Source of the DNA: Macrostomum lignano
Lineage: Eukaryota
DNA: 64,000 bases
Direction: 5' to 3'
Assembly (NCBI GenBank): GCA_002269645.1
Contig: NIVC01002672.1
Span: 1 to 64,000 of the forward strand
The first letter of the stretch is position 1. Each line of letters begins with the position of its first letter. This document shows, one piece after another, positions 1-34,635 of this stretch. A program made the translations under genes and the position numbers. The notes beneath the pieces are model-generated. The model saw only the letters and a program-made list of their open reading frames with translations, searched no databases and had not been told where the DNA came from.

Positions 1-254
1 TCGGCCTGGGCGGCGCTGGGAAGACGAGGTGAGACTGGCCTAAACGGCTACTCATTTCACTTTGCAGTGGATTGAAAGTTTCAGTGTCTCTAAAATAGAA
101 ACTAATAAATCGGCTTTGGAAATGGAATCTATTGTTACATCCATTGTTCATTGATGAATTGATGAATTGTGACTAATGCACTGCCGTCTATTGAAGCTTG
201 TACGAGTAACTTCACGCGACAGTCAGAGCCTCACGTTTCATGCCCAAATTGGAG

Positions 255-836: not shown

Positions 837-1242
837 TCTCATGCGAGCCCTGATGTCGCCGGACTTCAAGGCGCCGCAAATTCGCCTGGAGGCCATCACG
901 GATGGCATTGACATCAGCACATGGACAATCAACAGGTCAGGCCAGTCCGTCACCTTCAGCGTGTGGGACTTCGCCGGCCAGACGCTGTACTACAACACGC
1001 ACCAGTTCTTCCTGACCGCCCGCGCCGTGTACCTGCTGGTGTGGAACATGCGGCTGGGCTTCGAGCACGCTGGCCTGGACTTCTGGATGAACAGCATCTC
1101 CTGCCACGCTCCCGGCGTGCCAATCTTTGTTGTGGGGACTCACTGCGACAAGGTGGCGAAGTTCGACATGCCAGTGCAGGATCTCAAGGATAAATATCCC
1201 GGAATTGTGGGATTCTTCTCAGTCAGCTCAGCGAGCGGAGAG
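837..1242 (+). CDS. Roco exon encoding most of the ROC GTPase domain (G2-G5)
   Basis: (S)LMRAL...AITDGIDISTW...SVWDFAGQTLYYNTHQFFLT...IFVVGTHCDK...FSVSSASGE. Acceptor ccccgtcag at 836, donor GAG|gtgagc at 1243. Confidence 0.9.
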
Positions 1243-4958: not shown

Positions 4959-7900
4959 AACTCTCCTCTGAATCCCTGGAGGCAGCGAGATTGTAATCGG
5001 CTCTTTGATGAAGGCAAATATTTGCGCGGCGGAATTGCAAATGTGCCGCTCGGGTTTCGGGGGGGCAATCGCGGGGTCCGCCGGGAGGGCAGGGGAGCGG
5101 ACAGGCCCAGACAGACGCCCCAGAGCGATAGCTCAGGAGTTCAAAGTCTTTCGAGAGTCGGCGAACGAAAACTGACCTCGGGCAATTAGATAGTTGTGGA
5201 CAAAATACGCGAAATTCGATTATTTCAAATTCGCAACTTAATCCGATTATTAACAGGGAGTTGAGCAGCTGCTCAAGCAGATTCTGGAGACAACACTGAG
5301 CCAGCCATACATTGGCGAGCACGTGCCAGAGGCTTGGCTTAACTTTGAGAAGGCGATTATCAGGTAAGTGGCTAATTGGCGAGTGCTATTTCTGACCGTC
5401 ATGTCCTCGGAATGAAAAGCACACATTTTTCATCCTTCAGCAACCGGAGCTCGAACAGTCTGCTCAAGTGGAGCGAAGTGATGCAGCTTGGCAAGAAGAC
5501 TGGAATTTACGGCGAAGAGGTGCAATTTTATGCTTGCTTGAACTGCGGAATTAGCAGCAGGATTAACAGCAGGATTAACAGCAGGATTAACAGCAGGATT
5601 AACAGCAGGGTTAGCAGCAAGATTAACAGCAGGATTAACAGCAGGATTAACAGCAGGATTAACAGCAGGGTTAGCAGCAAGATTAACAGCAGGATTAACA
5701 GCAGGATTAACAGCCGGATTAGCAGCAGGATTAACAGCAGGGTTAGCAGCAGGACTAACTATGGGATTAACAGTAGGATTAACAGCAGGATTAACAGCAG
5801 GATTAACAGCAGGATTAACAGCAGGACTAACTATGGGATTAACAGTAGGATTAACAGCAGGATTAGCAGCAGGATTAACAGCAGGATTAACAGCAGGATT
5901 AACAGCAGGATTAGCAGCAGGATTAACAGCAAGATTAGTAGCAAGATTAACAGCGGGATTAACAGTAGGATTAACAGCAGGATTAAGAGCAGGACTAACT
6001 GTGCGATTAACAGTAGGATTAACAGCGGGCTTAACAGTAGGATTAGCAGTAGGATGAACAGCAGGATTAACAGCGGGATTTACAGCAGGATTAACTGCGG
6101 GATTAACTGCGGGATTAACAGTGGGATTAACTGCGGGATTAACAGTGGGATTGATAGCGGGATTTACAGCAGGATTAACTGCGGGATTAACTGCGGGATT
6201 TACAGCAGGATTAACTGCGGGATTAACAGTGGGATTGATAGCGGGATTAATTCTTCCAATTCCGGCAGGTGCCGCAAGCTGTGCAGTTTCTTCACGACAT
6301 GGGCAGTCTGCAGCACTTCGACTCTGACTTGCTGTACGACATTGTCATCATCAATCCGCAGTGGCTGGTGGACGTGATGGCCTGCGTTGTCACCGTGCAC
6401 AATCACGTGATCAAGGTAGGCTGGTGCGCGTATCCTCGATGGGGTGGGGGGGGGGAAGATGAGGCCTGCCACAAATCAAGGGGGACAGTAGTCGTTGGCC
6501 ACTGACCACAAAACCGAGTAGCTGTTGAGCCTTGAGCACAAAGTCGAGTAGCTGTTGAGCCTTGAGCACAAAGTCGAGTAGCTGTTGAGCCTTGAGCACA
6601 AGTCGAGTAGTTGTTGACCATTGAGCACAAAATCGAGTAGCTGTTGACCATTGAGCACAAAGTCGAGTAGCTGTTGACCATTGAGCACAAAACCGAGTAG
6701 CTGTTGACCATTGAGCACAAAGTCGAGTAGCTGTTGACCATTGAGCACAAAACCGAGTAGCTGTTGACCATTGAGCACAAAGTCGAGTAGCTGTTGACCA
6801 TTGAGCACAAAACCGAGTAGCTGTTGACCATTGAGCACAAAGTCGAGTAGCTGTTGACCATTGAGCACAAAACCGAGTAGCTGTTGAGCCTTGAGCACAA
6901 AACCGAGTAGCTGTTGTCCATTGAGCACAAAGTCGAGTAGCTGTTGACCATTGAGCACAAAACCGAGTAGCTGTTGACCATTGAGCACAAAGTCGAGTAG
7001 CTGTTGACCATTGAGCACAAAACCGAGTAGCTGTTGAGCCTTGAGCACAAAACCGAGTAGCTGTTGACCATTGAGCACAAAGTCGAGTAGCTGTTGACCA
7101 TTGAGCACAAAACCGAGTAGCTGTTGACCATTGAGCACAAAGTCGAGTAGCTGTTGAGCCTTGAGCACAAAGTCGAGTAGCTGTTGAGCCTTGAGCACAA
7201 AGTCGAGTAGCTGTTAACACTCAATCAGGATGCACAGCAGCCCTGATTTTCTGATGGTCGGGCGTGTTCGTGAATACTGTGAATTTCACGAAAAGCATTT
7301 TGTTCATGGGATCGAACTTCTATAAGTTGGGGCGGTCTTGAGGCACCTGTTCAGCATAGAGGAAATTGAGTCTGGGAGCGGCGACCGTGGGAACAGGAGC
7401 AGCACGGGCTCCCCAACTGGATGACAAACAAACGTCCGGACTTTCTCCTCTCATTTCACTTCCCTCATCCGTGCCCTCCCTGCCTTTTTAGTCCCGTAAG
7501 CGCTTTGGTTTTGGAATTTCAAGCAGCTGGCCTGATGTTGATTCCAGGTTAGACTCAAGGAAGCGGCGCCCTTCTTCCCCCAAGCCTCTTTCTCCTGTCA
7601 TATCCGTCCTCCGGATTTCTGAACTCAGAAGACTGCGTTTGAATTGGCGCGAAATGCGCCACTCCAATCGAATTCTCCAATTCTCTCCCTTATTCAAACA
7701 GTATTGGAATATCAGTGGAGAAAAGTGCGTTTCGCCTTTGGTAACATCTTCCCACTACAGGCGAGGAATGAGCTGGCCCAATCGGGCCAGATGTGCAACC
7801 GACAGCTCAGCCGCAGCTATTGCGCGGCGCATCTGAAAGCTGCATACGGTTGTTCAGTCAAAGGACTGGGGGTTGCCGCACACACCTTATGTAATGCTGG

Positions 7901-10900
7901 CACCCATTTTACAGTTGGGTGAACTGAAGCAATGCAGAGTAAAAGTGTCTTGCTCAAGGACACAAATTGTTCCAATGGGATCGGGAATCGAACCCCCAAC
8001 CTTCTAGTTGCGAGTCCGACGCTCTAACCTCTAGGCTACAGCAATGAGGACATACAAGCGCATCAATGCCTGGCCGGGTACGGGGATCCAACCTACACCT
8101 ACACCTACACCAACCCGCAGGAGGGCCGGTTCAAGCACGAAGACATCCACACTATCTGGAAGGACTACCCGGCCCAGCTGCACGATTGGCTCCTCACCCT
8201 GACGGAGACTTTCGACTTGACTTTCCCGCTCACCGACTCCGGTGTCAGCGTTGTGCCCTGCCTTCTGCCGCAGAAGAAGCCCCAGTTCGATTGGGACGAC
8301 GTCACCGCGCTCGGCGACATCCAGGAGGCCAAGATGAAGTACACCTTCGACTACCTGCCGGCTGGTCTGTTCAACAGGGCCCAGGTGCGACTGTGCCAGT
8401 TCTCCGACGACCTGGTGATCTGGCAGCGGGGATCCCTGCTGTGCAAGGGCGACCACCGGGCCCTCATGGTCAAGAAGGGGTGCGTCTGGGTGCCCAGTAC
8501 CAGCCTGCTGCCTTTTTGTTGCGAGAGAAAAATATCAAAAATATTTTCCCTCATCGCCCGTTTTTCATTTCACAGGGAACGCACAGTGTTAGTGAAGGTG
8601 CAGGGCTCTTCTCCCGAGAACATGCTGATGCTGATACACGAAGTGTTCGAAGGCCTCATCGCCGAGGCGTTCGGCGGGGTCTCCTACGTGTACGAGGTGC
8701 CGTGCATTGACTGTGTCAGACAGGTGAGAGAATGCCGTGGCATGCCGGCACGCTTGGGTTAAACTGATCAACCTGTGTGCTTTTTTAATTTCAGAAAATC
8801 CAAGAGCCGGCCATGTTCAGCAGCCAGGTGCTGCGCAGGGCCATCGAGATGCGGGCCTTGTTTCTCCAGTGCCATTCCATGTTCCACTGCGTGCCGATTC
8901 CCACCCTGCAAGGTACCGGGAGCTGTTTTGCCACTTTTTCTTGTACTATACTGGTTTAAAAATATCCACAAAGTCTAACAAAGCTTTGCTATCAAGCACT
9001 AGTTGCTAGGCGCTGTGCAGTGGGCACAGACGGACTGCATAGGTACAGTCGCGCTTCTATCATGCGACGAACGAAATAACGAAGCAAAGCATCCTAACTG
9101 GAGTTTTCGGTGCATCAAAACTCAAGCAGGTGCAACAAGCAACAGAGCAAATATGCGTAAACACTAATTATCATTCAGTTGCAAAACCGCCCGATCTCTT
9201 GCAATTTGAGCTTTATAGAGGCTCAGCAATGGGGCTGGACAACCGTCAGACACTCAGTCCACAGTGCACACAGAGGCTCAGCAATGGGGCTGGACAACCG
9301 TCAGACAGTCAGTCCACAGTGCACACAGATACTCAGCATTGGGGCTGGACAACCGTCAGACAGTCAGTCCACAGTGCACACAGATACTCAGCATTGGGGC
9401 TGGACAACCGTCAGACACTCAGTCCACAGTGCACACAGAGGGGCTGGACACCCATGAGTGACAGGCAGAAACTTCAGCAGGATTATGCTGACCGTAGGGA
9501 ATAGAAGGCCATAATTGAATAAGGCAAGCAGCTCAGATGCGTCAGTCATGTAGAATAGCCTGGCATCGCTCCACAAAGCGACAGGCACATGGCTCAGCGA
9601 CTATCTAATAACAGTCTGCGGGGCAGCTGGGGGAAACGCACGGGAAAGCCGATCGCCAATTTCAGGAAGCGGCGCAGAGGCGGACTTATGTAGCCAGGCT
9701 TAATGAATAGTAGAAAGTGGGGCGAGGCAAAAACGGTTTAACCTTCTGCCTCGTTGCACGCTAAACTCATTCGCCCTCCTCGCCCTCCTCACTCCCGTCT
9801 CCCAGCTGTGATGCCGCCCGAATCGCCCGCCGACTTTGAGCTGCACTTTGAGCGCTCAGTGAACGACCTGTCAGCGGCCCGGCTGGACCTCGTGCACGAC
9901 GTCACCCTCATCTTCTGCTGCGCCAACAAGAGCGGCGGCGGCGGGGACATCATAGAGAAGATCCAGGCTGGCTTGGAGACTGCCGGCTTATCTGTGTGAG
10001 TATAGCAAGCGGCAGAGTTGAAGAAGCTGCCGGCTTATCTGTGTGAGTATAGCAAGCGGCAGAGTTGAAGATACTGCCGGCTTATCTGTGTGAGTATAGC
10101 AAGCGGGAGAGTTGAAGCTGCCAGCTTATCTGTGTGAGTATAGCAAGCGGCAGAGTTGAAGATACTTCCGGCTTATCTGTGTGAGTATAGCAAGCGGCAG
10201 AGTTGAAGCTGCCAGCTTATCTGTGTGAGTATAGCAAGCGGCAGAGTTGAAGATACTTCCGGCTTATCTGTGTGAGTATAGCAAGCGGCAGAGTTGAAGA
10301 TACTTCCGGCTTATCTGTGTGAGTATAGCAAGCGGCAGAGTTGAAGATACTTCCGGCTTATCTGTGTGAGTATAGCAAGCGGCAGAGTTGAAGATACTTC
10401 CGGCTTATCTGTGTGAGTATAGCAAGCGGCAGAGTTGAAGATACTGCCGGCTTATCTGTGTGAGTATAGCAAGCGGGAGAGTTGAAGCTGCCGGCTTATC
10501 TGTGTGAGTATAGCAAGCGGGAGAGTTGAAGCTGCCGGCTTATCTGTGTGAGTATAGCAAGCGGCAGAGTTGAAGCTGCCAGCTTATCTGTGTGAGTATA
10601 GCAAGCGGGAGAGTTGAAGAGGCTGCCGGCTTATCTGTGTGAGTATAGCAAGCGGCAGAGTTGAAGCTGCCAGCTTATCTGTGTGAGTATAGCAAGCGGG
10701 AGAGTTGAAGAGGCTGCCGGCTTATCTGTGTGAGTATAGCAAGCGGCAGAGTTGAAGCTGCCAGCTTATCTGTGTGAGTATAGCAAGCGGCAGAGTTGAA
10801 GATACTTCCGGCTTATCTGTGTGAGTATAGCAAGCGGCAGAGTTGAAGCTGCCGGCTTATCTGTGTGAGTATAGCAAGCGGCAGAGTTGAAGATACTGCC

Positions 10901-13900
10901 GGCTTATCTGTGTGAGTATAGCAAGCGGCAGAGTTGAAGATACTGCCGGCTTATCTGTGTGAGTATAGCAAGCGGGAGAGTTGAAGCTGCCGGCTTATCT
11001 GTGTGAGTATAGCAAGCGGGAGAGTTGAAGCTGCCGGCTTATCTGTGTGAGTATAGCAAGCGGCAAAGTTGAAGAGGCTGCCGGCTTATCTGTGTGAGTA
11101 TAGCAAGCGGCAAAGTTGAAGAGGCTGCCGGCTTATCTGTGTGAGTATAGCAAGCGGCAAAGTTGAAGAGGCTGCCGGCTTATCTGTGTGAGTATAGCAA
11201 GCGGCAAAGTTGAAGAGGCTGCCGGCTTATCTGTGTGAGTATAGCAAGCGGCAGAGTTGAAGAGGCTGCCGGCTTATCTGTGTGAGTATAGCAAGCGGCA
11301 GAGTTGAAGAGGCTGCCGGCTTATCTGTGTGAGTATAGCAAGCGGCAGAGTTGAAGAGTCTGCAGTCTCTAATGATGCCGATGATGGACTAACCCTGGCC
11401 GGATGCTGAGTGGCCGGGGCCTGAAATAATGAAGCTTGGAGTAGAAGAGATTCAAGGTGCTTCTTTAATCAGTGCTGGGCGTAGCCACCCGTAGCCAGGC
11501 CGCATCCCCGAGACCGGCTATTTTCTGTCGTCAGGATTAAAAGTGAGGCCCCGCATTTTCCAAGCCCGTCAAGACAACCGCGGGAAAATCCGACTCTTTC
11601 GTTAGTCTCTGGCCTCGACTGCTTTTTTAAGTACAAGCTAGTTTACAACAATGCGGTTGGACACCTCAGTGGCAGACTCTTATAGGCATCAAGATAGCGA
11701 CATGGAGCCCGATGCAGCACTAGTGTGCTTTTAGCACCGGTGCTGATTTTGCTTCCCCGCCGCCCCGACACCGAGCAGGCAGTGCGTGTCGGACGAAGCA
11801 ACATCCGAAGAGCGCAGCCTGTCGGACAGCATGGCCCTGCTGCAGCAGTCAGGCTGCTGCCTGTGCCTCATATCCAACGAGTTCGTGCTGTCGGAAACCT
11901 GCGCTCAGTACCTGTCGCTGGCTACTGAGCACCTGAAGAAGCCGCTAGTGCTTGGCCTGGTCGGCAGCGGCAAGGACTGGCAGCAGACAGCGCTGGGCGC
12001 CCGCCTGTCCGGTCTGGTGTACATCAACTTCCAGCGCGAGGCCCAGTTCGACGCCAAGCTGGCCGAGGCGGTGGCCGCCGTCAGGGAGAAGAGCGGCGCC
12101 GGCAAGCGAGAGGTGAGCCGGGCGATTTCAACTGATCACTCGTTGAATTGCCTGCCTGATTTCCTGCAACCATGTGCGAGTGTGTTGTGTTTGCCGCGTC
12201 TGACTCTCTTGTGAATGTTCTTTGCTAAGCATAACTGCAACTCGCCAACTATGAAATGGTGCGTGCAGAAGATTGCCAGCTTTTTTTATGTGTCAGCGCC
12301 AGCTGCCTCAGGCTTGCATGAGCAGCATAGTACTTCGCGGGCAACCGGAATCCCACAAATCCCCCCAATCTCGGGAGAATCCGCCGACCAGACGGCGGAG
12401 ACAGGCGAGCTTAGCGCAGCCTCTCAGACCGATCCTTCAGCTGGGACGAAACAAAAGCGCTCGTAAAATCAGCCATGTTTGTCGGACAGCTCTGGCGCAG
12501 CTGGGGCATCCCTGCTGGCCCGGCAGGCTCTCATTAGCCTTTTAGCGGCAGTAACAAGCCGCTGAGCTTAGCAGAGTTCGGGCGGTTGCGGCTTGGCAGT
12601 CCGGATATGCTCGTATGCGATAGCCTGTAATAAGCGCGAGTAAAAATCTGAGAACGCAGTAAGTCAGGCGTAGGATGAGGATTAACACTGCAGTGTATTC
12701 TTCTGCTGTCGCAGGACAAAGGATCTTCTGTCTTTAATGAGGGAAGCCGACCCTAAAGTCAGGCCTTCTTACCAGAATAGAGCATGGTTGCTGTTTTTTT
12801 AACAGAAAAGACAAAACTTATTGTCAAATGACGCGCGCGGGAAACGACAAATGAGCACAACATATAGTAAAAGTGATCAAATCGCGGTTATCAAACAAGG
12901 GAAATGGGTGAACTAGTAAGAATAATAATCAGTTTCAAAACTTGCAATCAAAGAGGAACGATGCGGACTCGGGAGCTACGCTAGATGAAGCAATCCACTA
13001 TTTATTATTGACAATGATGAGCACAACAAATACAGTTAAGAAATTTGCTTTGATTGTCCAATGCAGGGCAACTCAGACGCCTGCTTTTGCTACAGAAGAT
13101 TCAGTGACTTCAGATTCGGCAAGATTCGGTTCTCCGGCTCGGCTCAGTCAGCACCGCCTGGGTGCCACTTCAGCGGAGCCAGAGCGGCATCCTCTATATG
13201 CGATGGGACAGCGGTGGCCACCGCCGCGGCCTCCGCCCGCCTCAGCGCGTTGGCCTCCCTGCTCAGCATGCTGTAGTTGTTGTTCTGCAGGTGGTTGTTG
13301 TAGTAGTTGTAGTTGTTGCTGCGGCCCTGGCGTCTGTCTGGCAGGTGCAGCATCTGCCTCACCGTCTCCCTGAAGGTGTTGCTGGTGCTGCTGTAGATGA
13401 TGAAGTTGGTGAAGCTGTCCGCGCTCAACAGGATGTTGGCCAAGAAGGTGGTGTGCATGCGGATCTGGTTGAAGCCTCGCATCGAGGCGAAGATGGTCTG
13501 GTTCAGAATGAAGAACAGAAAGGTCGGCAGCTCGCAGATGATGAACGAGAACATCAGAATCATGACGGTCTTGGTCGCCGCGTCCTGGCTGCGGCTGCCG
13601 CTGCCGCTGGCGCCGCCGCCGCCGCCGCGGCCACTGCCGCTTCCAGCGCTGCCGCCGCTGTTCTGCTGCAGCAGTCGGCGCCTGCGCAGGATGAAGATGA
13701 TCACCAGCGACAGGCCGCTGATGAGGAATATCGGGGCGATGGTCTGCAGCGGGAACACCAGCAGAGTTTTGTAGTGCCTGTAGGACGGATTCTTGTCCAG
13801 GATGTGGTGCGTAGCCGTTGTCAGGCTGTAGACGGTTGTCTCGGTTGAGTTGTTCTCAGCCGGGTACTCGCAAATTGTCCAGGTGAACTCAAACAGCCGG

Positions 13901-16900
13901 GGCGCGCACACCAGCAGCGACAGGATGAGCGTCAGGGCGTAGCAGGCCTGGCTGCGCCTGTGGCTGAACAGCTGGCCACGCCGGGTGCTGAACGGGTTGC
14001 TGACCACCTCGCAGCGGCTGCCGGCGATCATCACCAGACTCCAGTTGCGCACCATGATGAAGGCGTTGGCGATGGCGAACGACAGGAAGAACGCGCAGGT
14101 GATCATCTGCGGGTGCAGGGGGCTATCGAAGGCCTGGCGGCCGGCGTCGGCCATCACGGTCAGCATGACGGTGAGGTTGACAGCGAAGCCGATGTTCAGC
14201 ACAGTCTCGGACAGGGACAGCAGCAGCAGCAGGCGGCCCATGATGACATTTTTCTTGTCCAGAATGAACACTATGAGGGAGAAACCGTTGGTCAGGGCGT
14301 TCAGGTAGCTCAGAACGCAAGCGATGTACAAATAGACGTTGGCGGCGCCGCCAGCGGGGCCTTCCGAGCTGCCGGAGTCGTTCAGGCAGCTGCCGTTGAC
14401 AGCCACATAGGCGAGCATCGCTGCTGAGCTGAGCTGATTCTCACTGAACTGAACTGGGAGCTGAGAATCGAACCTGAGTAGTCCGCTGGTTGGCCTTCTC
14501 GGCTCTCCGCCCTGATGGATTTTTCTAGTCCTCCACTTCAGCGAAGCCTCAGCCTCCGCCAATCCGCCCCGGCTCGCTTGTCCTTCACAGCCAATGGCCG
14601 GGCTCCCAGACAACAGCTGCACACTTTAATCTGTCGGATTTGGCAGCGGCTCAAAATCCAGTTTTAAATCCTTTAAAGCTGTTTGAAGTCTCAAGGCTGA
14701 CATCAAACTGTCGTAGTGCTTTTGCAGCTCATCCATAATGCACCACGCACAATAGGTTAATGAAAATGAACGAAGCACTGTACCAAGGCTCTGGGCGGCT
14801 TATGGCTCAGATGGGATTAAGGACTTGAAATTAGGGAATTCGTCCTTTCTGTCTGATTGAATCATACGGTTCTCCTCAGGTCAAAGGGAGCCGCCAACTT
14901 CATGGGAGATTTGCGTCAGCCTGACCGCCTGTTCTGATTCCGCTTTTGCTGCCAAACTTTCTTCGAGCTAATTATAAAAGCATGAGCAGGCTCGACAACA
15001 CTGCTGGATGTACTTTTAAAATATTACTGGCTTATTTTTATAAGCCAGTGTTTTACTAGCAATTGTTATTAAAATCTGCGGGTCAGTGCACCCCCTGGGA
15101 GAGGTGTTTGCCTCCTAATTAATCAGATTCTTATCCGAGCGGTAAGATGCGGATGACGCTGTCGAAATTGCTGGCATAATTGCACTGCTCCGCATCCGTG
15201 CATTTTTGTTGAAGGAAATCCCAAGCCTAGGTGGTAATGAGAGACTTCACGACTTTGGGAATAATAATGTGTGCGCTAATGCCAAAAAAATTGAGTCTTG
15301 ATCCAAACTAACGGCTGAGTTAGGATTCCCTGATCACCTTGTGCATGCCGTTCATTGCAAACGGCATAGTCAATAACACCTTACAGTCCATGCACCTGAC
15401 ACAATGAAGTACGTGACTCGCACAATACCTCACACAGTTCTCAAAATTCATCACACACCTCTCAAAACCCATCGCACAACTCACATCACTCATCACACAC
15501 CTCACGCAACCCATCACACACCTCATACAACCCATCACACCTCATACAACCCATCACACACCTCACACAACCCATCGCACACCTCACACAACCCATCACA
15601 CACCTCACACAACTCATCACACACCTCACACAACCCATCGCACACCTCACACAACTCATCGCACACCTCACACAACCCATCACACACCTCACACAACCCA
15701 TCGCACACCTCACACAACCCATCACACACCTCACACAACCCATCACACACCTCACACAACCCATCGCACACCTCACACAACTCATCACACACCTCACACA
15801 ACCCATCGCACACCTCACACAACTCATCGCACACCTCACACAACCCATCACACACCTCACACAACCCATCGCACACCTCACACAACCCATCGCACACCTC
15901 ACACAACCCATCACACACCTCACACAACCCATCACACACCTCACACAACCCATCGCACACCTCACACAACCCATCACACACCTCATACAACCATCGCACA
16001 CCTCACACAACTCATCGCACACCTCACACAACCCATCACACACCTCACACAACCCATCGCACACCTCACACAACCCATCACACACCTCACACAACCCATC
16101 ACACACCTCATACAACCATCGCACACCTCACACAACTCATCGCACACCTCACACAACCCATCGCACACCTCACACAACCCATCACACACTTCACACAACC
16201 CATCACACACCTCACACAACCCATCACACACCTCACACAACCCATCGCACACCTCATACAACCCATCACACACCTCACACAACCCATCGCACACCTCACA
16301 CAACTCATCGCACACCTCACACAACCCATCACACACCTCACACAACCCATCGCACACCTCACACAACCCATCACACACTTCACACAACCCATCACACACC
16401 TCACACAACCCATCACACACCTCACACAACCCATCGCACACCTCATACAACCCATCACACACCTCACACAACCCATCGCACACCTCACACAACCCATCAC
16501 ACACTTCACACAACCCATCACACACCTCATACAACCCATCACACACCTCACACAACCCATCACACACCTCACACAACCCATCGCACACCTCATACAACCC
16601 ATCACACACCTCACACAACCCATCACACACCTCACACAACCCATCACACACCTCACACAACCCATCACACACCTCACACAACCCATCACACACCTCACAC
16701 AACCCATCACACACCTCACACAACCCATCACACACCTCACACAACCCATCACACACCTCACACAACCCATCACACACCTCACACAACCCATCACACACCT
16801 CACACAACCCATCACACACCTCACCCGCAGCGGGTCAGCGGGCGCGCAGACGTGTTCATCAGCTACTGCTGGGCGAACTCGCAGGAGGCGGTCAAGGCAG

Positions 16901-19900
16901 GCCACGGCAAGGCCACCAGCCGCTCCATCGGGTTCGGCGATCCCCGGAAACTCAAGAAGCACCTGGAGGAAGCCGGCGGCCTTTCCTGCTGGATTGACAT
17001 CGAACGGCTGGGCGAGAACGGCATGTTTGAGGACCTCTGCCAGGGACTCAAGGCCTGCAAGCTGGTGGTGGCCTGCCTCTCCGATGAGGTGAGAACTGAT
17101 CGCGACTGGGCATTAGAATGCGTGCTATTGATTACGAGCGTATTATTCAACTCTAAATATTTGCAGCTCACTGTGAATCTCTAGAGCTCACTGTGAATCT
17201 CTGCAGCTCACTGTGAATCTCTGCAGCTCACTGTGAATCTCTGCAGCTCACTGTGAATCTCTGCAGCTCACTGTGAATCTCTGCAGCTCACTGTGAATCT
17301 CTGCAGATCACTGTGAATCTCTGCAGCTCACCGTGACACTGTGCAGCTCACTGTGAATATCTGCAGCTCACTGTGAATCTCTGCAGCTCACTGTGAATCT
17401 CTGCAGCTCACTTTGAATTTATGCAGCCCCAATTAGCGCAAAAAATATCGCTTGCAAAATCATCCGCAATGCTTTCTGAAGCTAAAAGTAAAAAAAATTT
17501 TCCCCAATCGCAGTACGTGGCATCGAAGAACTGCCAGATGGAGTATCGCTTTGCTCACCTGACGCTCAACCGGCCCATGGTGATCTGCGTTGTGGGCACC
17601 GGCGTGCTGTGGGAGTCCACTGAGGTGAGCGGGGGCGACTGCGGAGTCTGGGGGGGGGGCAGTTGGAACTCGAACGGGAGATAAGGAATGGGAACTGAGG
17701 TATGAGATGAGAGCAGAGATGAAGTGAGAAACTTAGCTGAGAGGAGAAATGACATGAAGGTAGAAACAGGTGAGAGTAAAATGAGATGAAAAGCGGAGGA
17801 AACAGGTGAGAGTAAAATGAGATGAAAAGCGGAGGAAACAGGTGAGAGTGAAATGAGATGAAGGGAGAACAGGTGAGAGTGAAATAAGATGAAGGGAGGA
17901 ACATGTAAGAGTGAAATTAGATGAAGGGAGGAACATGTAAGAGTGAAATTAGATGAAGGGAGGAACATGTAAGAGTGAAATTAGATGAAGGGAGGAGGAA
18001 CAGGTGAGAGTGAAATGAGAAGGGAGGAACAGGTGAGAGGAGAAATGAGAAGGGAGGAACAGGTGAGGGGAACAGGTGAGAGGAGAAATGAGAAGGGAGA
18101 AACAGGTGAGAGGAGAAATGAGAAGGGAGAAACAGGTGAGAGGAGAAATGAGAAGGGAGAAACAGGTGAGAGGAGAAATGAGAAGGGAGAAACAGGTGAG
18201 AGGAGAAGTGAGAAGGGAGGAACAGGTGAGAGGAACAGGTGAGAGGAACAGGTGAGAGGAGAAATGAGAAGGGAGGAACAGGTGAGAGGAGAAATGAGAA
18301 GGGAGGAACAGGTGAGAGGAACAGGTGAGAGGAACAGGTGAGAGGAGAAATGAGAAGGGAGGAACAGGTGAGAGGAACAGGTGAGAGGAGAAATGAGAAG
18401 GGAGGAACAGGTGAGAGGAGAAATGAGAAGGGAGGAACAGGTGAGAGGAGAAATGAGAAGGGAGGAACAGGTGAGAGGAGAAATGAGAAGGGAGGAACAG
18501 GTGAGAGGAGAAATGAGAAGGGAGGAACAGGTGAGAGGAGAAATGAGAAGGGAGGAACAGGTGAGAGGAGAAATGAGAAGGGAGGAGCCAGTGAAAAGTG
18601 AAAGGAGTGAGAGAAAGGTGAAATAAGATACAAAGTGGCTGGAAAGGAGGAAAGCGGAAATCGATTCCCAGGACAGTGGAAACGATGAAGCGGGGTTTTC
18701 ACTCAGTCCCAGTTCAGGTGGCCCTGCAGTGGGGTCTCGGCCCAGCTTAGCATAAATCTTCTTTCAGCGCATCGCAGCCCGGCAGCCACCCACACGCAAG
18801 CAGCCGGACTGCTTTTGGCTTTGGTCTTGACCCTTATGTGAAATTTTTCCTTAACATGAGATTCGATGCACTTTAATTCGAATCCGCTGTTTCATGTTTT
18901 TTATAAATTCTGAAAGCAGTCGCAGATAAATAAACTAAAGAATTTGAAACCTGGTGAGATTGGTACCTAATCTAGAGATATTGATATCTAGTCTAGTGAG
19001 ATTAGCATCTAGTCTAGTGAGATTGGCATCTAGTCTAGTGAGATTAGCATCTAGTCTAGTGAGATTAGCATCTAGTCTGGTGAGATTGGCATCTAGTCTA
19101 GTGAGATTAGCATCTAGTCTAGTGAGATCTAGTCTAGTGAGATTGGCATCTAGTCTAGTGAGACTGGTATCTAGTCTAGTGATATTGGCATCTAGTCTAG
19201 TGAGATTAGCCTCTATTCTAGTGAGATTGGCATCTAGTCTAGTGAGATTAGCCTCTATTCTAGTGAGATTGGCATCTAGTCTAGTGAGAAGATTGGTATC
19301 TAAACTAGTGAGATTGGTATCTAGTCCAGTGAGATTGGTATCTAGTCTAGTGAGATTGGTATCTAGTCCAGTGAGATTGGCATCTAGTCTAGTGAGATTA
19401 GCATCGAGTCTAGTAAGATCGGTATCTAGTCTAGTGAGATCGGTATCTAGTCTAGTGAGATCGGTATCTATCTAGTGAGATTGGTATCTAGTCTAGTGAG
19501 ATTGGTATCTAGTCTAGTAAGATTGGTATCTAGTCTAGTGAGATTGGTATCTAGTCTAGTGAGATTGGCATCTAGTCTAGTGAGATTGGTATCTATCTAG
19601 TGAGATTGGTATCTAGTCTAGTGAGATTGGTATCTAGTCTAGTGAGATTATGGTATCTATCTAGTGAGATTGGTATCTAGTCTAGTGAGATTGGTATCTA
19701 GTCTAGTGAGATCGGTATCTATCTAGTGAAATTGGTGAAATTGGTATCTATCTAGTGAGATCGGTATCTAGTCTAGTGAGATTGGTATCTAGTCTAGTGA
19801 GATTATGGTATCTATCTAGTGAGATTATGGTATCTATCTAGTGAGATTGGTATCTAGTCTAGTGAGATTGGTATCTAGTCTAGTAAGATTGGTATCTAGT

Positions 19901-21924
19901 CTAGTGAGATTGGTATCTAGTCTAGTGAGATTGGCATCTAGTCTAGTGAGATTGGTATCTAGTCTAGTGAGATTGGTATCTAGTCTAGTAAGATTATGGT
20001 TAAAAGCATGTAATTCATTGAGAAAAGCATCTAATCTAGTGAGAAAAGCATCTAATCTACCGAACCGAACAACCCCGGCAGATCGGCATGATGTCGCTCG
20101 GTCATCCAAAGGTGAACTTCCAAGCTGCCAGCGAATCCTGCTACGACGCTCTGCTGAGCGCGGTGACGGAGACGCTGGAGAGGTACTACCCCATCAAACG
20201 GCCGGACAGCAAGGACAGTCTCCGCAAGCGGCGCAAAAGCAGCCTGAGCAGTCCGGGCGGAGGTGGCGCCATGTTCCAGGTGATGCATTTTCTCTTGACT
20301 GGTTACCTATCTAGTACGAGATAATGATGGAGAGATAATGATTTTCTGGAGGGCTAGGGGCGCCCTGACGCAGCTTCGGTGACAACTGTCACAGTACATG
20401 AGCACACAAGCGCGTCAATGTTGTACGCAGACACGCACTCATGCACACTGGGTGCACAGCGGCTCCTGACTGAAAACCGGCATGATATCCGAAAAACTAC
20501 TTAAAGTAGAAAGTAAATAAATAACTGTTATTTTTTCTGTTCCTAATTGGAAAACTGTCAAACATGGCTACAGGAACTGATCGAGCTCGCCCAGCGCAAA
20601 GTCTACCGCCAGTTCTCCGGATTTCTCGACACGGCCGAGCAGTTTCCCTGCCTCATCGTGGCCGACATCTATACTGACTCTGTGAGTAGGCTCTGCCATT
20701 TCCCAGTCTACCATTTCCCAGTCTACCATTTCCCAGTCTACCATTTCCCAGTCTACCATTTCCCAGTCTACCATTTCCCAGTCTACCATTTCCCAGTCTA
20801 CCATTTCCCAGTCTACCATTTCCCAGTCTACCATTTCCCAGTCTACCATTTCCCAGTCTACCATTTCCCAGTCTACCATTTCCCAGTCTACCATTTCCCA
20901 GTCTACCATTTCCCAGTCTACCATTTCCCAATCTACCGTTTTAGTCTGCCTGACAAGCTCTCCATCAATTTCCCAACCAATCATCCCTGTCGTCTCGGCC
21001 ACTCCGCAGGACAACCCGGCCGACAGCCCGGACAAGACCGAGTTCTCCGCCGTGGCCGCCTTCGCCGACGACGCGGCCGCGGACGAGCCGCCGCTGTCTG
21101 ACGACGGCGTCGAAGACGAGCCCCGCTTCCAGTTCCGGTTCCGCCTGCTCTGCGAGCACGAGGGCGGCTGGCATGCGGCCCCAGGCGCCGGCCTGCCGCT
21201 CCGCCTCGGCCGGGACGCCGCCCTGCAGCTGCTGGGAGGCCTGGCGCCGCTGCTGCTCCGCCTGGCGCTGGTCCTCCGGCACAGCCGGCGCTCCGGCCTG
21301 GACACCGCGGCCGACCCCGTGGCCGGCGGCCGCCTGCTCGATCACTTGCGCGCGGCAGCTGAGCGCGCCGGGCCCGAGGCCGACCTGCGTCAGCTGCACG
21401 CGGCGCTGCGCCAGCACCTGCGCCGCCGGGACCCGGGCATCGCTGCCGGCCTACGCCGCTGCCACCTGCCGTCAGGAAAAATCCTCTGGCTGTGCCCGGA
21501 GCACCAGAGCCAGCCGAGGACCGTCGTGCTGGCGGACGCCGCCACGGCCGTCCCTGCTGCTGACGCTGGTGACACTGCGGAGGACGAGGAGGAGGAGCTG
21601 CTGGCGCAGGTGTTGTCGGTGGTCGGCAGCGGCGCCGTCGCGTCTGTCGCTGCTGAATCGGCGGCTGCCGAGGCGGCCGAGCAGTCCAGCTCCAAGCGCA
21701 AGCTGGCCGTCGCTGGCCTCGGCCGCATCGACGAAGCCGTCGAGTCGCCCGAGCCGTCGGCCTCGGCTGCGTCCTCCGCTGCGGCGGCGGCGGCTGCGAC
21801 GGCGGCGACACCCGTGAAGGATGCGCGGCAAGGCAGAGTGGGCAGCCCCCCGAGCGTAAGGAAGCGGCCGTTCAGCGCGCCGGCCGGGCAGGGCCAGAAG
21901 AGCCGCGCCTGCCAGCTGCTGTGA
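837..21924 (+). CDS. Roco-family protein (ROC GTPase-COR-TIR-TIR-C-terminal domain-CaaX), 5'-partial, multi-exon
   Basis: Hand-spliced phase-consistent GT-AG exons: 837-1242, 5257-5363, 5441-5519, 6269-6415, 8121-8479, 8576-8723, 8795-8912, 9806-9995, 11779-12112, (possible 12297-12404), 16831-17088, 17514-17624, 20082-20279, 20574-20681, 21010-21924 (TGA). ROC motifs TDGIDI, FSVWDFAGQ..YYNTHQFFL and VVGTHCDK are present. The P-loop and any LRRs lie upstream of the window. Confidence 0.88.
1350..1803. repeat. 23-bp minisatellite (GGGAGGTCAGATTGTCCTGTACT)
   Basis: Direct tandem units. Confidence 0.95.
3310..3810. repeat. Degenerate purine-rich ~20-bp tandem repeat (GATTAGAGAGAGATTAGATG)
   Basis: Imperfect tandem units. 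Confidence 0.85.
5257..8912 (+). CDS. Roco exons encoding the COR domain
   Basis: Exons 5257-5363 (YIGEHVPEAWL), 5441-5519, 6269-6415 (AVQFLHDMGSLQHF...IINPQWL), 8121-8479 (VPCLLP...YTFDYLPAGLFNR...IWQRG), 8576-8723 (PCIDC), 8795-8912. These are typical COR-A/COR-B motifs. Confidence 0.88.
5546..6250. repeat. 12-bp minisatellite (GGATTAACAGCA) filling a Roco intron
   Basis: Direct tandem units; it occupies nearly all of intron 5520-6268. Confidence 0.95.
6503..7215. repeat. 30-bp minisatellite (AGTCGAGTAGCTGTTGACCATTGAGCACAA)
   Basis: About 24 near-identical units with alternating AGTC/AACC variants. Confidence 0.95.
7795..8039 (-). mobile_element. tRNA-derived SINE with CORE-like central domain, copy 1
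   Basis: The minus strand has an A-box (TAGCCTAGAGG), a B-box (GGTTCGATTCC), then TGTGTCCTTGAGCAAGACACTT..CTTCAGTTCACCCAACTGTAAAATGGG. A highly similar copy lies at 46833-47082. Confidence 0.8.
9222..9450. repeat. 55-bp minisatellite (about 4 copies)
   Basis: GGGGCTGGACAACCGTCAGACAGTCAGTCCACAGTGCACACAGATACTCAGCATT units. Confidence 0.92.
9806..12112 (+). CDS. Roco exons encoding degenerate TIR domain 1
   Basis: Exons 9806-9995 and 11779-12112: DVTLIFC...LETAGLSV...CCLCLISNEFVLSETCAQYLSLA...KKPLVLGLVG...DWQQTALG...YINF. TIR_2-like pattern. Confidence 0.75.
9980..11358. repeat. 44-48-bp minisatellite containing the exon end and 5' splice site (CTGCCGGCTTATCTGT|GTGAGTATAGCAAGCGGCAGAGTTGAAG..)
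   Basis: About 30 units; the first unit overlaps the last 16 coding nt of exon 9806-9995. Confidence 0.95.
13144..14418 (-). CDS. Intronless class A (rhodopsin-like) GPCR, peptide/FMRFamide-receptor-like, nested antisense in a Roco intron
   Basis: Single ORF with seven hydrophobic segments: TM3 SRC in place of DRY (AGSRCEVVSNPF), TM4-ECL2 APRLFEF, TM6 SFIICELP, TM7 NFIIY. N-glycosylation sites near the N-terminus. Likely start MLAYVAVNGS at 14418; the ORF is open further upstream to 14622. Confidence 0.9.
   Translation of the reverse strand: MLAYVAVNGSCLNDSGSSEGPAGGAANVYLYIACVLSYLNALTNGFSLIVFILDKKNVIMGRLLLLLSLSETVLNIGFAVNLTVMLTVMADAGRQAFDSPLHPQMITCAFFLSFAIANAFIMVRNWSLVMIAGSRCEVVSNPFSTRRGQLFSHRRSQACYALTLILSLLVCAPRLFEFTWTICEYPAENNSTETTVYSLTTATHHILDKNPSYRHYKTLLVFPLQTIAPIFLISGLSLVIIFILRRRRLLQQNSGGSAGSGSGRGGGGGASGSGSRSQDAATKTVMILMFSFIICELPTFLFFILNQTIFASMRGFNQIRMHTTFLANILLSADSFTNFIIYSSTSNTFRETVRQMLHLPDRRQGRSNNYNYYNNHLQNNNYSMLSREANALRRAEAAAVATAVPSHIEDAALAPLKWHPGGAD
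15470..16824. repeat. 21-bp CA-rich minisatellite (CACACCTCACACAACCCATCA)
   Basis: About 64 units; it ends a few nt before acceptor AG at 16829-16830. Confidence 0.95.
16831..20279 (+). CDS. Roco exons encoding TIR domain 2
   Basis: Exons 16831-17088, 17514-17624, 20082-20279: DVFISYCW...LSCWIDIE...LCQGLKACKLVVACLSDEYVASKNCQMEYRFA...PMVICVVG...WESTEIG. Confidence 0.88.
17161..17415. repeat. 20-bp minisatellite (GCAGCTCACTGTGAATCTCT)
   Basis: Direct tandem units. Confidence 0.95.
17715..18590. repeat. Purine-rich ~30-bp minisatellite (GAGAAGGGAGGAACAGGTGAGAGGAGAAAT)
   Basis: Direct tandem units with 12-bp sub-units. Confidence 0.92.
18954..20055. repeat. 21-bp minisatellite (GTGAGATTGGTATCTAGTCTA)
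   Basis: Direct tandem units; it ends about 25 nt before acceptor 20081. Confidence 0.95.
20574..21924 (+). CDS. Roco last two exons: C-terminal domain (LCEHEGGWH...GLRRCHLPSGKILWLCPEH), low-complexity tail and CaaX box CQLL
   Basis: Exons 20574-20681 and 21010-21924 are in phase 0, and the ORF track 21052-21924 agrees. Confidence 0.8.
20696..20938. repeat. 15-bp minisatellite (CCATTTCCCAGTCTA) x ~16
   Basis: Near-perfect units starting 14 nt after donor 20682. Confidence 0.95.

Positions 21925-24263: not shown

Positions 24264-34635
<10,372 letters not shown>

What the first reader, a model, noticed from the sequence alone, without database searches (positions are those of the whole stretch)
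9806..20279. Asymmetric TIR pair: TIR2 keeps the NADase catalytic Glu, TIR1 has lost it
Seen: TIR2 reads LSDEYVASKNCQMEYRFA, while TIR1 reads ISNEFVLSETCAQYLSLA at the equivalent helix (C-x-x-E versus C-x-x-Y). Known: the alphaC glutamate (SARM1 E642; the WCxxE motif of plant and bacterial TIRs) is required for NAD+ hydrolysis. Inference: an active TIR paired with a scaffold/pseudo-enzyme TIR.
Basis: partly seen in the sequence, partly recalled or inferred. Interest (0 to 1): 0.7.

Follow-up and report, generated by a model that had tools for sequence, protein, structure and literature searches.

The report
Flatworm ROCO gene with lopsided TIR pair
The flagged stretch holds five exons of an already annotated but unstudied flatworm gene for a large Roc-COR GTPase that carries two TIR domains in a row. 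Only the second TIR keeps the glutamate that TIR enzymes need, a lopsidedness shared by relatives across animals, but whether that second domain really cleaves NAD+ is unproven, and two relatives tested negative.

Summary
The window is the start of Macrostomum lignano contig NIVC01002672.1. Coordinates 9806-20279 span five exons of a 15-exon + strand gene, GenBank PAA56038.1 ('hypothetical protein, partial'), with the layout Roc - COR-A/B - TIR1 - TIR2 - uncharacterised C-terminal module - CaaX box.

Four independent alignments and an AlphaFold model (pLDDT 87) put TIR1 Tyr (codon 11909-11911) and TIR2 Glu (17541-17543) at the same alphaC position as SARM1 E642. The TIR2 peptide exists only after splicing.

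Across 85 homologous tandems, TIR2 has Glu in 84. TIR1 has it in 9, all of them divergent members, so the loss is old and derived.

- TIR2 reads NxxxE, not the WxxxE motif.
- The Glu alone does not predict activity: only 12 of 61 Glu-bearing animal TIRs were active in a 2026 screen.
- Two TIR2 orthologs (Rotaria, Dimorphilus) in that screen showed no cADPR isomers and no NAD+ depletion.

My best reading is a GTPase-gated, membrane-anchored signalling protein. Its conserved TIR2 would be the working, probably catalytic, domain and the degenerate TIR1 its structural or regulatory partner. This is a new member of a catalogued family, of moderate interest.

The parts
3..28 (+). Exon 1 as present on the contig. 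It encodes the Roc P-loop (GLGGAGKTS). The gene's N-terminus lies off the contig and window start.
   Evidence: Mapping of P0076 (PAA56038.1) onto the window. The contig starts at window position 1.
837..1242 (+). Exon 2: Roc GTPase domain (DFAGQ, THCD motifs).
   Evidence: Pfam Roc E=1.8e-16, Ras E=5e-9. GT-AG junctions.
5257..6415 (+). Exons 3-5 (5257-5363, 5441-5519, 6269-6415): end of Roc and the N-terminal part of COR-A.
   Evidence: tblastn of homologs. Exact match to P0076.
8121..8723 (+). Exons 6-7 (8121-8479, 8576-8723): COR-A C-terminal part and COR-B.
   Evidence: Pfam COR-B E=1.1e-18, COR-A E=1.5e-9. Junctions.
8795..8912 (+). Exon 8: conserved COR-to-TIR1 linker (…MFSSQVLRRAIEMRALFLQC…).
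   Evidence: Conserved in all homologs in alignment A1. Junctions.
9806..9995 (+). Exon 9: TIR1, N-terminal half (betaA VTLIFCC, alphaA).
   Evidence: Pfam TIR_2 on spliced TIR1, E=1.3e-8. AF2 model. Junctions.
11779..12112 (+). Exon 10: TIR1, C-terminal half. The alphaC reads SETCAQ-Y-LSLA, with the Tyr codon at 11909-11911 in place of the catalytic Glu.
16831..17088 (+). Exon 11: TIR2, betaA (DVFISYCW) through betaC (…VVACLSDE).
   Evidence: Pfam TIR_2 E=1.4e-12 on spliced TIR2..
17514..17624 (+). Exon 12: TIR2 alphaC and betaD. Reads YVASKNCQM-E-YRFA, with the Glu codon GAG at 17541-17543.
20082..20279 (+). Exon 13: TIR2 betaE and alphaE (IGMMSLGHPKVNFQ…) plus a linker.
   Evidence: Homolog P0053 and the UniRef M. 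lignano models P0074/P0075. Junctions.
20574..20681 (+). Exon 14: start of the conserved C-terminal module (ELIELAQRKVYRQF…). It is skipped in the alternative model P0075.
21010..21924 (+). Exon 15: C-terminal module (LLCEHEGGWH … SGKILWLCPEH), a low-complexity tail, the CaaX box CQLL and the stop codon.
   Evidence: Alignments A7 and A8. CaaX-like tails in 16 of 22 orthologs examined. No Pfam or PDB match.
13144..14622 (-). Not part of the gene product: an intronless rhodopsin-type GPCR ORF (492 aa) nested in the 4.7-kb intron between TIR1 and TIR2.
   Evidence: Pfam 7TM_GPCR_Srw E=1.2e-14, 7tm_1 E=2.5e-12.

Best explanation
The region is the TIR-TIR part of a spliced Macrostomum lignano gene for a ROCO-family signalling GTPase. 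Full-length orthologs read MBT - LRR - Roc - COR-A/B - TIR1 - TIR2 - Cys/His C-module - CaaX.

Shown here:
- The two TIRs are old internal duplicates.
- TIR2 is under strong constraint and keeps the pocket triad betaA-Tyr / BB-loop-Asp / alphaC-Glu.
- TIR1 keeps the fold but has lost all three pocket residues and evolves fast.

Inferred mechanism:
- The protein sits on a membrane through its prenylated tail.
- Ligand sensing by the N-terminal repeats and the Roc-COR GTP cycle drive dimerisation or oligomerisation, which brings the TIR pairs together.
- TIR2 is the output domain. Most likely it is a glutamate-dependent NAD+-processing enzyme of unknown product. Otherwise it is a nucleation surface for other TIR proteins.
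- TIR1 is a non-catalytic partner that either holds TIR2 in check or supplies the neighbouring-subunit (BB-loop / 'BE'-type) contacts that TIR active sites need. This would be analogous in cis to the Glu-less sensor TIRs paired with Glu-bearing executor TIRs in plants (RRS1/RPS4).
For: Gene model and identity. Domains: Roc, COR-A and COR-B; two TIR folds.

Position equivalence, Tyr against Glu.

Family survey of 85 tandems:
- TIR2: Glu 84/85, betaA Tyr 84/85, BB-loop Asp 85/85.
- TIR1: Glu 9/85, otherwise V, L, I, M, A or Y.

Divergence: TIR2 is 41-52% identical to homologs, TIR1 18-25%. TIR1 and TIR2 are each other's closest relatives (28%; hhalign E=2e-19).

Enzyme-type leaning of TIR2:
- Pfam TIR_2 rather than TIR.
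- The best PDB profile hit is the NADase Cat1, E=2.3e-7.
- The top Foldseek hits are SARM1 and RPP1.
- There is no TLR-type 'RDxxPG' BB loop (alignment).

Independent structure-based assignment in orthologs: Capitella R7TDS1 is MET / GLU, and Dimorphilus A0A7I8VYT1 is LEU / GLU.

Architecture and distribution: MBT-LRR-Roc-COR-TIR-TIR in amphioxus and Dimorphilus. Orthologs occur in scallop, abalone, nemertean, amphioxus and rotifers. CaaX tails are conserved.

Literature:
- TIR active sites are built from two TIRs across the BE interface.
- Glu-less plant TIRs are partners of Glu-bearing ones.
Against: Two orthologous TIR2 domains (Rotaria sp. Silwood1 A0A818LFL5, Dimorphilus A0A7I8VYT1) gave no cADPR, 2'cADPR, 3'cADPR or NAD+ depletion when over-expressed alone in E. 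coli.

TIR2 lacks the alphaC aromatic of WxxxE. It has Asn, in 70 of 85 tandems. That aromatic is important in SARM1, L6, ROQ1 and AbTir.

A conserved Glu does not guarantee activity, as TLR2, IL-1R9/10, TirB and TirD show.

The relative packing of TIR1 and TIR2 could not be inspected. No coordinates or PAE were available, and pTM was only 0.61.

The N-terminal sensor part of this particular gene is off the contig. No expression or functional data exist for M. lignano.
Confidence: 0.5

Rival explanations
1. Both TIRs are non-enzymatic protein-interaction modules of the TLR/MyD88 scaffold type. The ROCO protein would signal by recruiting other TIR adaptors. The invariant TIR2 Glu would serve structure or binding, not catalysis. 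The TIR1/TIR2 difference would reflect different binding partners.
For: - The orthologous TIR2 domains were inactive in the 2026 screen.
- The motif is NxxxE instead of WxxxE.
- Single-sequence and profile PDB hits include MyD88, TLR1 and TLR6.
- 49 of 61 Glu-bearing animal TIRs were inactive.
- TLR2 and IL-1R9/10 keep the Glu without activity.
Against: - The Tyr/Asp/Glu pocket triad is conserved in 84-85 of 85 members, including protist-like sequences. TIR2-type domains also occur in a chytrid fungus and a protist transcript.
- The best profile hit is an NADase, Cat1, and the top structural hits are SARM1 and RPP1.
- There is no TLR-type BB-loop Pro-Gly.
- The screen tested isolated domains and only three products, limits its authors state themselves.
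Confidence: 0.3
2. TIR2 is an enzyme, but not a classical NAD+ to cADPR or ADPR enzyme. It would make a product or use a substrate that the published screen did not measure. Examples are ADPR conjugates, pRib-AMP/ADP-like molecules, or 2',3'-cNMP made from nucleic acids as in some plant TIRs. It might also be active only as the TIR1-TIR2 unit.
For: - The pocket triad is conserved but the cyclisation-linked aromatic is absent.
- The screen's authors list unmeasured products and missing native context as limitations.
- The composite two-TIR active site is documented.
Against: No direct evidence. NAD+ depletion was also not recorded for the two orthologs.
Confidence: 0.15
3. The asymmetry is meaningless decay: TIR1 would be a degenerating remnant, or the locus a pseudogene or annotation artefact.
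For: TIR1 is highly divergent. The gene is only a partial model at a contig end.
Against: - All 15 exons are open and all 14 introns are GT-AG.
- Independent UniRef models share the junctions.
- TIR1 is retained, with a confident fold (pLDDT mostly above 90), in flatworm, rotifers, molluscs, annelid, nemertean and amphioxus.
- Family-specific motifs such as GxGxxW are conserved in both TIRs.
Confidence: 0.05

Closest known systems
Invertebrate LRR-Roc-COR-TIR proteins. These include 'ecTIR-DC' proteins in the sense of Gerdol 2017 as cited by Kamm 2019, and the Aplysia ROC/COR/MBT 'TLR-like' proteins. Database names include 'MFHAS1', 'LRRK2' and 'pats1'.
   Same: - The backbone is the same: Roc, COR-A and COR-B followed by TIR, with MBT and LRR upstream in full-length orthologs.
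- The taxa are the same kind: molluscs, annelids, rotifers, placozoans and amphioxus.
- The window's protein is a direct ortholog or paralog of these, at about 30-36% identity over the TIR region.
   Different: - Published descriptions stop at domain cartoons.
- I did not find, in the papers I could search, a description of the conserved Glu / non-Glu asymmetry of the two TIRs, the C-terminal Cys/His module or the CaaX tail. The asymmetry is visible only as rows in a supplementary table.
- The defining Gerdol 2017 paper could not be read here.
Plant paired TNL immune receptors RRS1/RPS4 (sensor TIR without Glu plus executor TIR with Glu).
   Same: One TIR with the catalytic Glu is paired with one that lacks it. 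The Glu-less partner is regulatory. The RPS4/RRS1 TIR heterodimer, PDB 4c6t, is among the structural matches.
   Different: - The plant pair is two separate NB-ARC-LRR proteins from adjacent genes. Here the two TIRs are fused in one ROCO GTPase.
- There is no NB-ARC domain.
- The interface is unknown.
- Activity of the Glu-bearing partner is unproven here.
SARM1 / TIR-1 (the animal TIR NADase).
   Same: - SARM1 is the top Foldseek match by E-value (1.4e-4 for full-length 7djt); isolated SARM1 TIR-domain entries align at TMt 0.67-0.75, rmsd 3.2-4.2 A.
- The betaA motif DVFISY is shared.
- The BB-loop 'IDxExL…G.FED' is similar, and the Glu sits in the same column as E642.
   Different: - There are no ARM or SAM domains.
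- TIR2 has a roughly 17-residue insertion after betaA.
- TIR2 lacks SARM1's W638 equivalent (Asn) and the SARM1-specific insertion before alphaC.
- SARM1 has a single TIR.
Tandem pseudokinase-kinase arrangement of JAK kinases (a conceptual analogue only, from general knowledge).
   Same: An internal duplication in which the N-terminal copy has lost catalytic residues and is retained next to a conserved C-terminal copy.
   Different: A different fold and chemistry. The regulatory role of TIR1 is only hypothesised.

Membership tests
TIR domain (fold) | Flavodoxin-like alternating beta-alpha fold recognised by TIR profiles and structures | tested here: met
   Both halves meet it. Pfam TIR_2 gives E=1.4e-12 for TIR2 and 1.3e-8 for TIR1. 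The AF2 model has pLDDT 87 with a betaA-alphaE order in each half. Foldseek hits SARM1, RPP1, TLR1, RUN1 and MyD88 TIRs.
Enzymatic (NAD+-cleaving) TIR | Catalytic Glu on alphaC pointing into the pocket | tested here: met
   Met for TIR2 at sequence and secondary-structure level: Glu at 17541-17543 in the column of SARM1 E642, and 84 of 85 in the family. Side-chain orientation could not be checked. TIR1 does not meet it (Tyr).
Enzymatic (NAD+-cleaving) TIR | Aromatic residue four positions before the Glu (WxxxE motif) | tested here: not met
   TIR2 has Asn (NCQME), and Asn occurs in 70 of 85 family members. TIR1 has Thr. It is not absolute: a Lingula TLR TIR with Leu at this position was active (row 8).
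Enzymatic (NAD+-cleaving) TIR | Measured Glu-dependent NAD+ consumption or cADPR-isomer production | not testable with these tools
   This needs a bench assay. The nearest data are two TIR2 orthologs that were inactive as isolated domains in E. coli (Table S4 rows 136, 137).
Enzymatic (NAD+-cleaving) TIR | Composite active site formed by BB-loop-mediated TIR-TIR association | not testable with these tools
ROCO proteins | Roc GTPase immediately followed by a COR domain | tested here: met
   Roc E=1.8e-16. COR-A E=1.5e-9 and COR-B E=1.1e-18. The exon order is contiguous in PAA56038.1.
ROCO proteins | N-terminal LRR or other repeat sensor region | not testable with these tools
   The gene runs off the contig start. 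Orthologs carry MBT and LRR upstream.
ecTIR-DC families (Gerdol 2017) | Family definitions by domain architecture and phylogeny in the original paper | not tested
   The original paper is not in the searchable library. Only secondary mentions were read. The assignment, possibly 'ecTIR-DC 14', rests on those and is a lead, not a test.
Paired sensor/executor TIRs (RRS1/RPS4-like) | A Glu-less TIR functionally coupled to a Glu-bearing TIR | tested here: inconclusive
   The Glu status fits. Functional coupling and the interface are untested. The pair is in cis, not two proteins.
SARM1 orthologs | ARM - SAM - SAM - TIR architecture | tested here: not met
   No ARM or SAM domain was found in the window's protein or in full-length orthologs. 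Roc-COR precedes the TIRs.
Prenylated (CaaX) proteins | C-terminal Cys-aliphatic-aliphatic-X tetrapeptide | tested here: met
   The protein ends …KSRACQLL* at 21924. Similar tails occur in 16 of 22 orthologs checked. Actual prenylation is untested.

The most novel reading that the evidence does not exclude
The fused Glu-less / Glu-bearing TIR pair is a built-in asymmetric TIR dimer. TIR1 would supply the neighbouring-subunit (BB-loop) half of TIR2's active site. The enzyme would then work only as the tandem, and only when the Roc-COR GTPase switches it on at a prenyl-anchored membrane site. That would explain why isolated TIR2 orthologs scored inactive. It would define a bilaterian, ROCO-gated TIR nucleotide-signalling pathway with a pseudo-enzyme subunit, an animal counterpart in cis of plant sensor/executor TIR pairs.
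Probability: 0.2. Interest if true: 0.7.

Novelty: new member of a known kind. Interest (0 to 1): 0.38.

Why it matters
TIR enzymology in animals beyond SARM1 has only just opened up, with the 2026 screen showing cADPR production by TLR4 and various invertebrate TIRs.

This family is large, at about 2,000-3,300 residues per protein. It is conserved from flatworms, rotifers, molluscs and annelids to amphioxus. It joins a LRRK/MFHAS1-like GTPase switch to a TIR pair and a lipid anchor.

If the Glu-bearing TIR2 is catalytic only in the company of the Glu-less TIR1, that would give a natural example of a TIR pseudo-enzyme subunit. It would also give a reason to re-test 'inactive' animal TIRs in their native tandem context. 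If TIR2 is not catalytic, the family is one more example that the alphaC Glu alone is a poor predictor of activity.

Either way, the specific locus here is an ordinary, already annotated member of the family.

Tried and rejected
1. Prokaryote-style ORF reading gave only fragmented ORFs. The region is a spliced eukaryotic gene.
2. Single-sequence PDB searches for TIR1 and TIR2 gave only weak or chance hits. Profiles were needed.
3. I looked for a second copy or paralog elsewhere in the window and found none.
4. C-terminal module:
   - The AlphaFold model from a shallow alignment had pLDDT 53, so I ran no fold search on it.
   - The third homology search found only P0056 and the M. lignano fragments, which did identify the species.
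   - Profile-versus-PDB and Pfam scans gave no significant match.
5. I searched the preprint's supplementary tables for the M. lignano protein itself. It is not in the stored part.
6. I considered SARM1 orthology and rejected it on architecture.
7. I considered pseudogene or artefact and rejected it, because the frames are intact, the splice sites canonical and the gene conserved.
8. I could not inspect side-chain orientation of the Glu or TIR1-TIR2 packing, because model coordinates are not exposed.
9. A bacterial type III effector TIR and AbTIR appear in the preprint's control table. I deliberately did not use them as yardsticks.
Full report
**What is in the sequence**

The window does not look prokaryotic. 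ORFs are short and fragmented, and composition is patchy.

The TIR2 peptide is not contiguous. 'LSDE' ends an exon at 17088, followed by gtgaga. 'YVASKNCQMEYRFA' begins at 17514, after tcgcag.

Guided by homologs, I built a 15-exon model. It turned out to be identical, residue for residue, to GenBank PAA56038.1, 'hypothetical protein BOX15_Mlig008185g1, partial [Macrostomum lignano]'. The window is the first 64 kb of contig NIVC01002672.1 of assembly GCA_002269645.1, and the gene runs off the contig start.

All 14 introns resolve uniquely to GT-AG.

**Domain content**

- Exon 2 is a Roc GTPase (Pfam E=1.8e-16).
- Exons 3-7 are COR-A and COR-B.
- Exons 9-10 are TIR1.
- Exons 11-13 are TIR2 (Pfam TIR_2 E=1.3e-8 and 1.4e-12).
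- Exons 14-15 encode a conserved module with no Pfam or PDB match. Its invariant residues are C, E, GWH … WLC..H. The protein ends in a CaaX box, CQLL.

Full-length orthologs are 2,000-3,300 residues long. Pfam scans of amphioxus P0079 and Dimorphilus P0088 show LRR before Roc-COR-TIR-TIR, with two MBT repeats as well in P0079. Most orthologs also end in a CaaX-like tail. They come from scallop, abalone, a nemertean, amphioxus (there named 'MFHAS1'), the annelid Dimorphilus, rotifers, a snail and a M. lignano paralog.

**Is the Tyr/Glu contrast at the true catalytic position?**

Yes, by four independent routes.

1. MAFFT with reference TIRs whose sequences were printed by the literature tool puts TIR2 Glu in one column with SARM1 E642, dSarm E919, BdTIR E127 and TLR4 E750. 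TIR1 Tyr falls in that same column.
2. A TIR2 family profile against PDB aligns the Glu with the Glu of 'WCWDE' in the NADase Cat1 (E=2.3e-7) and of 'WCHYE' in TLR6.
3. Profile-profile comparison of the TIR1 family against the TIR2 family gives 99.2% probability, E=2e-19, and pairs TCAQY with NCQME.
4. An AlphaFold2 model of the tandem (40-sequence alignment, mean pLDDT 87) gives identical secondary-structure strings from betaC to alphaC in the two halves. Tyr101 and Glu264 are both the sixth residue of alphaC.

Foldseek finds SARM1, RPP1, TLR1, RUN1 and MyD88 TIRs.

Independently, Table S3 of bioRxiv 10.64898/2026.04.20.719644 records, from structural alignment, MET / GLU for the two TIRs of the Capitella ortholog and LEU / GLU for Dimorphilus.

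**How general is it?**

An exhaustive HMM search found 3,211 proteins at E<=0.001 and 159 at E<=1e-30. In 85 sequences that cover both catalytic columns:

| Position | TIR2 | TIR1 |
|---|---|---|
| alphaC catalytic column | Glu 84/85 | Glu 9/85; otherwise V, L, I, M, A, T, Y… |
| betaA Tyr | 84/85 | scattered |
| BB-loop Asp | 85/85 | scattered |

The nine Glu/Glu tandems are the most divergent members. They are a protist-transcriptome LRR-Roc-COR protein, an unnamed ENA contig, and Tudor/EF-hand-TIR-TIR proteins. Trichoplax B3S268 is also GLU / GLU in the preprint's table.

So the tandem is ancient, both copies probably began with the Glu, and TIR1 lost it before the protostome-deuterostome split. 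Amphioxus already has Ile there.

TIR1 is only 18-25% identical between the flatworm and its homologs, against 41-52% for TIR2. Yet it is always retained and is modelled with high confidence. That is the signature of a structural, non-catalytic copy.

**Does TIR2 work as an NADase?**

- The literature defines a WxxxE motif. The aromatic four residues before the Glu stacks on the substrate. Its mutation abolishes or reduces activity in L6, ROQ1 and SARM1, and abolishes cyclisation in AbTir. All cyclase-type TIRs surveyed had W, Y or F there. TIR2 has Asn (NCQME), as do 70 of 85 relatives.
- The Glu is not sufficient. TLR2 and IL-1R9/10 carry it but are inactive. Only 12 of 61 Glu-bearing animal TIRs were active in the 2026 screen. 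Dictyostelium TirB and TirD keep it without activity.
- Two unmistakable TIR2 orthologs are rows 136 and 137 of that screen's Table S4: Rotaria sp. Silwood1 A0A818LFL5 residues 1965-2110, and Dimorphilus A0A7I8VYT1 residues 1746-1890, the latter 51% identical to the window's TIR2. Both have an empty 'Active' column, meaning no cADPR isomer and no NAD+ depletion.

Against writing TIR2 off:

- The screen used isolated domains in E. coli and measured three products, limitations its authors stress.
- TIR active sites are composite, formed across two TIRs.
- A TLR TIR with Leu at the E-4 position was active (row 8).
- Near-absolute conservation of the Tyr/Asp/Glu triad over such distances is hard to explain by structure alone.

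**Most likely mechanism (inferred)**

This is a membrane-anchored (CaaX) ROCO switch. Its N-terminal MBT/LRR region senses something. Its Roc-COR GTP cycle controls self-association. Its output is TIR2.

TIR1 is a degenerate duplicate kept as a partner. It is either an intramolecular brake or the donor of the neighbouring-subunit contacts that TIR2 needs.

I put about 0.5 on this package. Roughly two-thirds of that is for TIR2 being catalytic in some form. I put about 0.3 on a purely scaffold reading, and about 0.15 on an enzyme with an unmeasured product or a strict tandem requirement.

The closest known parallel for the asymmetry is the plant RRS1/RPS4 pair, in which the sensor TIR lacks the Glu. 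The closest relatives by descent are the invertebrate LRR-Roc-COR-TIR proteins already catalogued in Aplysia and placozoans.

**Novelty and score**

The gene is annotated, as a hypothetical protein. The family is catalogued. The per-domain Glu / non-Glu calls for orthologs sit in a public supplementary table, and TIR2 orthologs have been assayed with a negative result.

In the literature I could search, I did not find three things: recognition that the asymmetry is a conserved, derived feature of a bilaterian ROCO-TIR-TIR family; the NxxxE deviation; and the conserved C-terminal Cys/His module plus CaaX tail.

I rate it 'new member of a known kind', with interest about 0.38.

Noticed in passing
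window 13144-14622 (- strand): An intronless 492-aa rhodopsin-type GPCR ORF (Pfam Srw / 7tm_1) lies on the opposite strand, inside the 4.7-kb intron that separates the TIR1 and TIR2 exons. It is a nested gene.
   Followed up: partly
window 9973-11363: A minisatellite (47-nt unit, about 30 copies; also read as a 91-nt unit x 15) starts inside exon 9. Its unit repeats the last ~18 nt of that exon together with the GTGAGT splice donor. The intron therefore carries about 30 tandem copies of the 5' splice site. The unit is not a multiple of 3.
   Followed up: no
window 21907-21924; homologs P0050, P0051, P0056, P0078-P0115: The protein ends in a CaaX box (CQLL). A [KR]S[KR]AC-a-a-X tail is conserved in most full-length orthologs (CSVM, CSLM, CTVM, CLLL, CVIM, CAIS…). 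This implies prenylation and membrane anchoring of a ROCO-TIR protein.
   Followed up: partly
window 20574-21600 (exons 14-15): A conserved C-terminal module with invariant C, E, G-W-H … W-L-C-x-x-H (a possible Cys2His2 metal site). It has no Pfam or PDB sequence match, and the AlphaFold model was poor (pLDDT 53).
   Followed up: partly
window 20574-20681: The UniRef M. lignano model P0075 (A0A1I8IAY3) skips exon 14 (ELIELAQ…IYTDS), whereas P0074 includes it. This may be alternative splicing or a difference between paralogs.
   Followed up: no
window 15449-16824, 17162-17427, 17716-18586, 18954-19995, 20692-20941: Every intron around the TIR2 exons is filled with long, high-identity minisatellites (units of 21, 20, about 30, 21 and 15 nt, with 13-66 copies). 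One array ends 7 nt before the exon 11 acceptor.
   Followed up: no
window 33457-33894 (+): An ORF with a hAT-family transposase C-terminal dimerisation domain (Pfam E=4.9e-11), probably a transposon remnant.
   Followed up: no
window 24331-27051 and 27734-28435 (- strand): A 906-aa Cys-rich ORF made of repeated ~190-aa modules plus a PPDTTS repeat tail (weak Sushi hit). Next to it lies a 233-aa ORF with a C-type lectin domain (E=5.7e-6). These may be secreted or surface proteins.
   Followed up: no
homolog P0029 (environmental, rotifer-like): A paralog carries three TIRs in a row: one TIR1-like without Glu, followed by two FISYC-type TIRs with Glu.
   Followed up: no
homologs P0068 (Rhizoclosmatium globosum), P0017 and P0145 (EukProt transcripts), P0131/P0135: The 'FISYCW … NCxxEF' TIR2 type also occurs in a chytrid fungus and in protist transcriptomes. 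Glu/Glu tandems occur fused to Tudor and EF-hand domains, so this TIR subfamily predates animals.
   Followed up: partly
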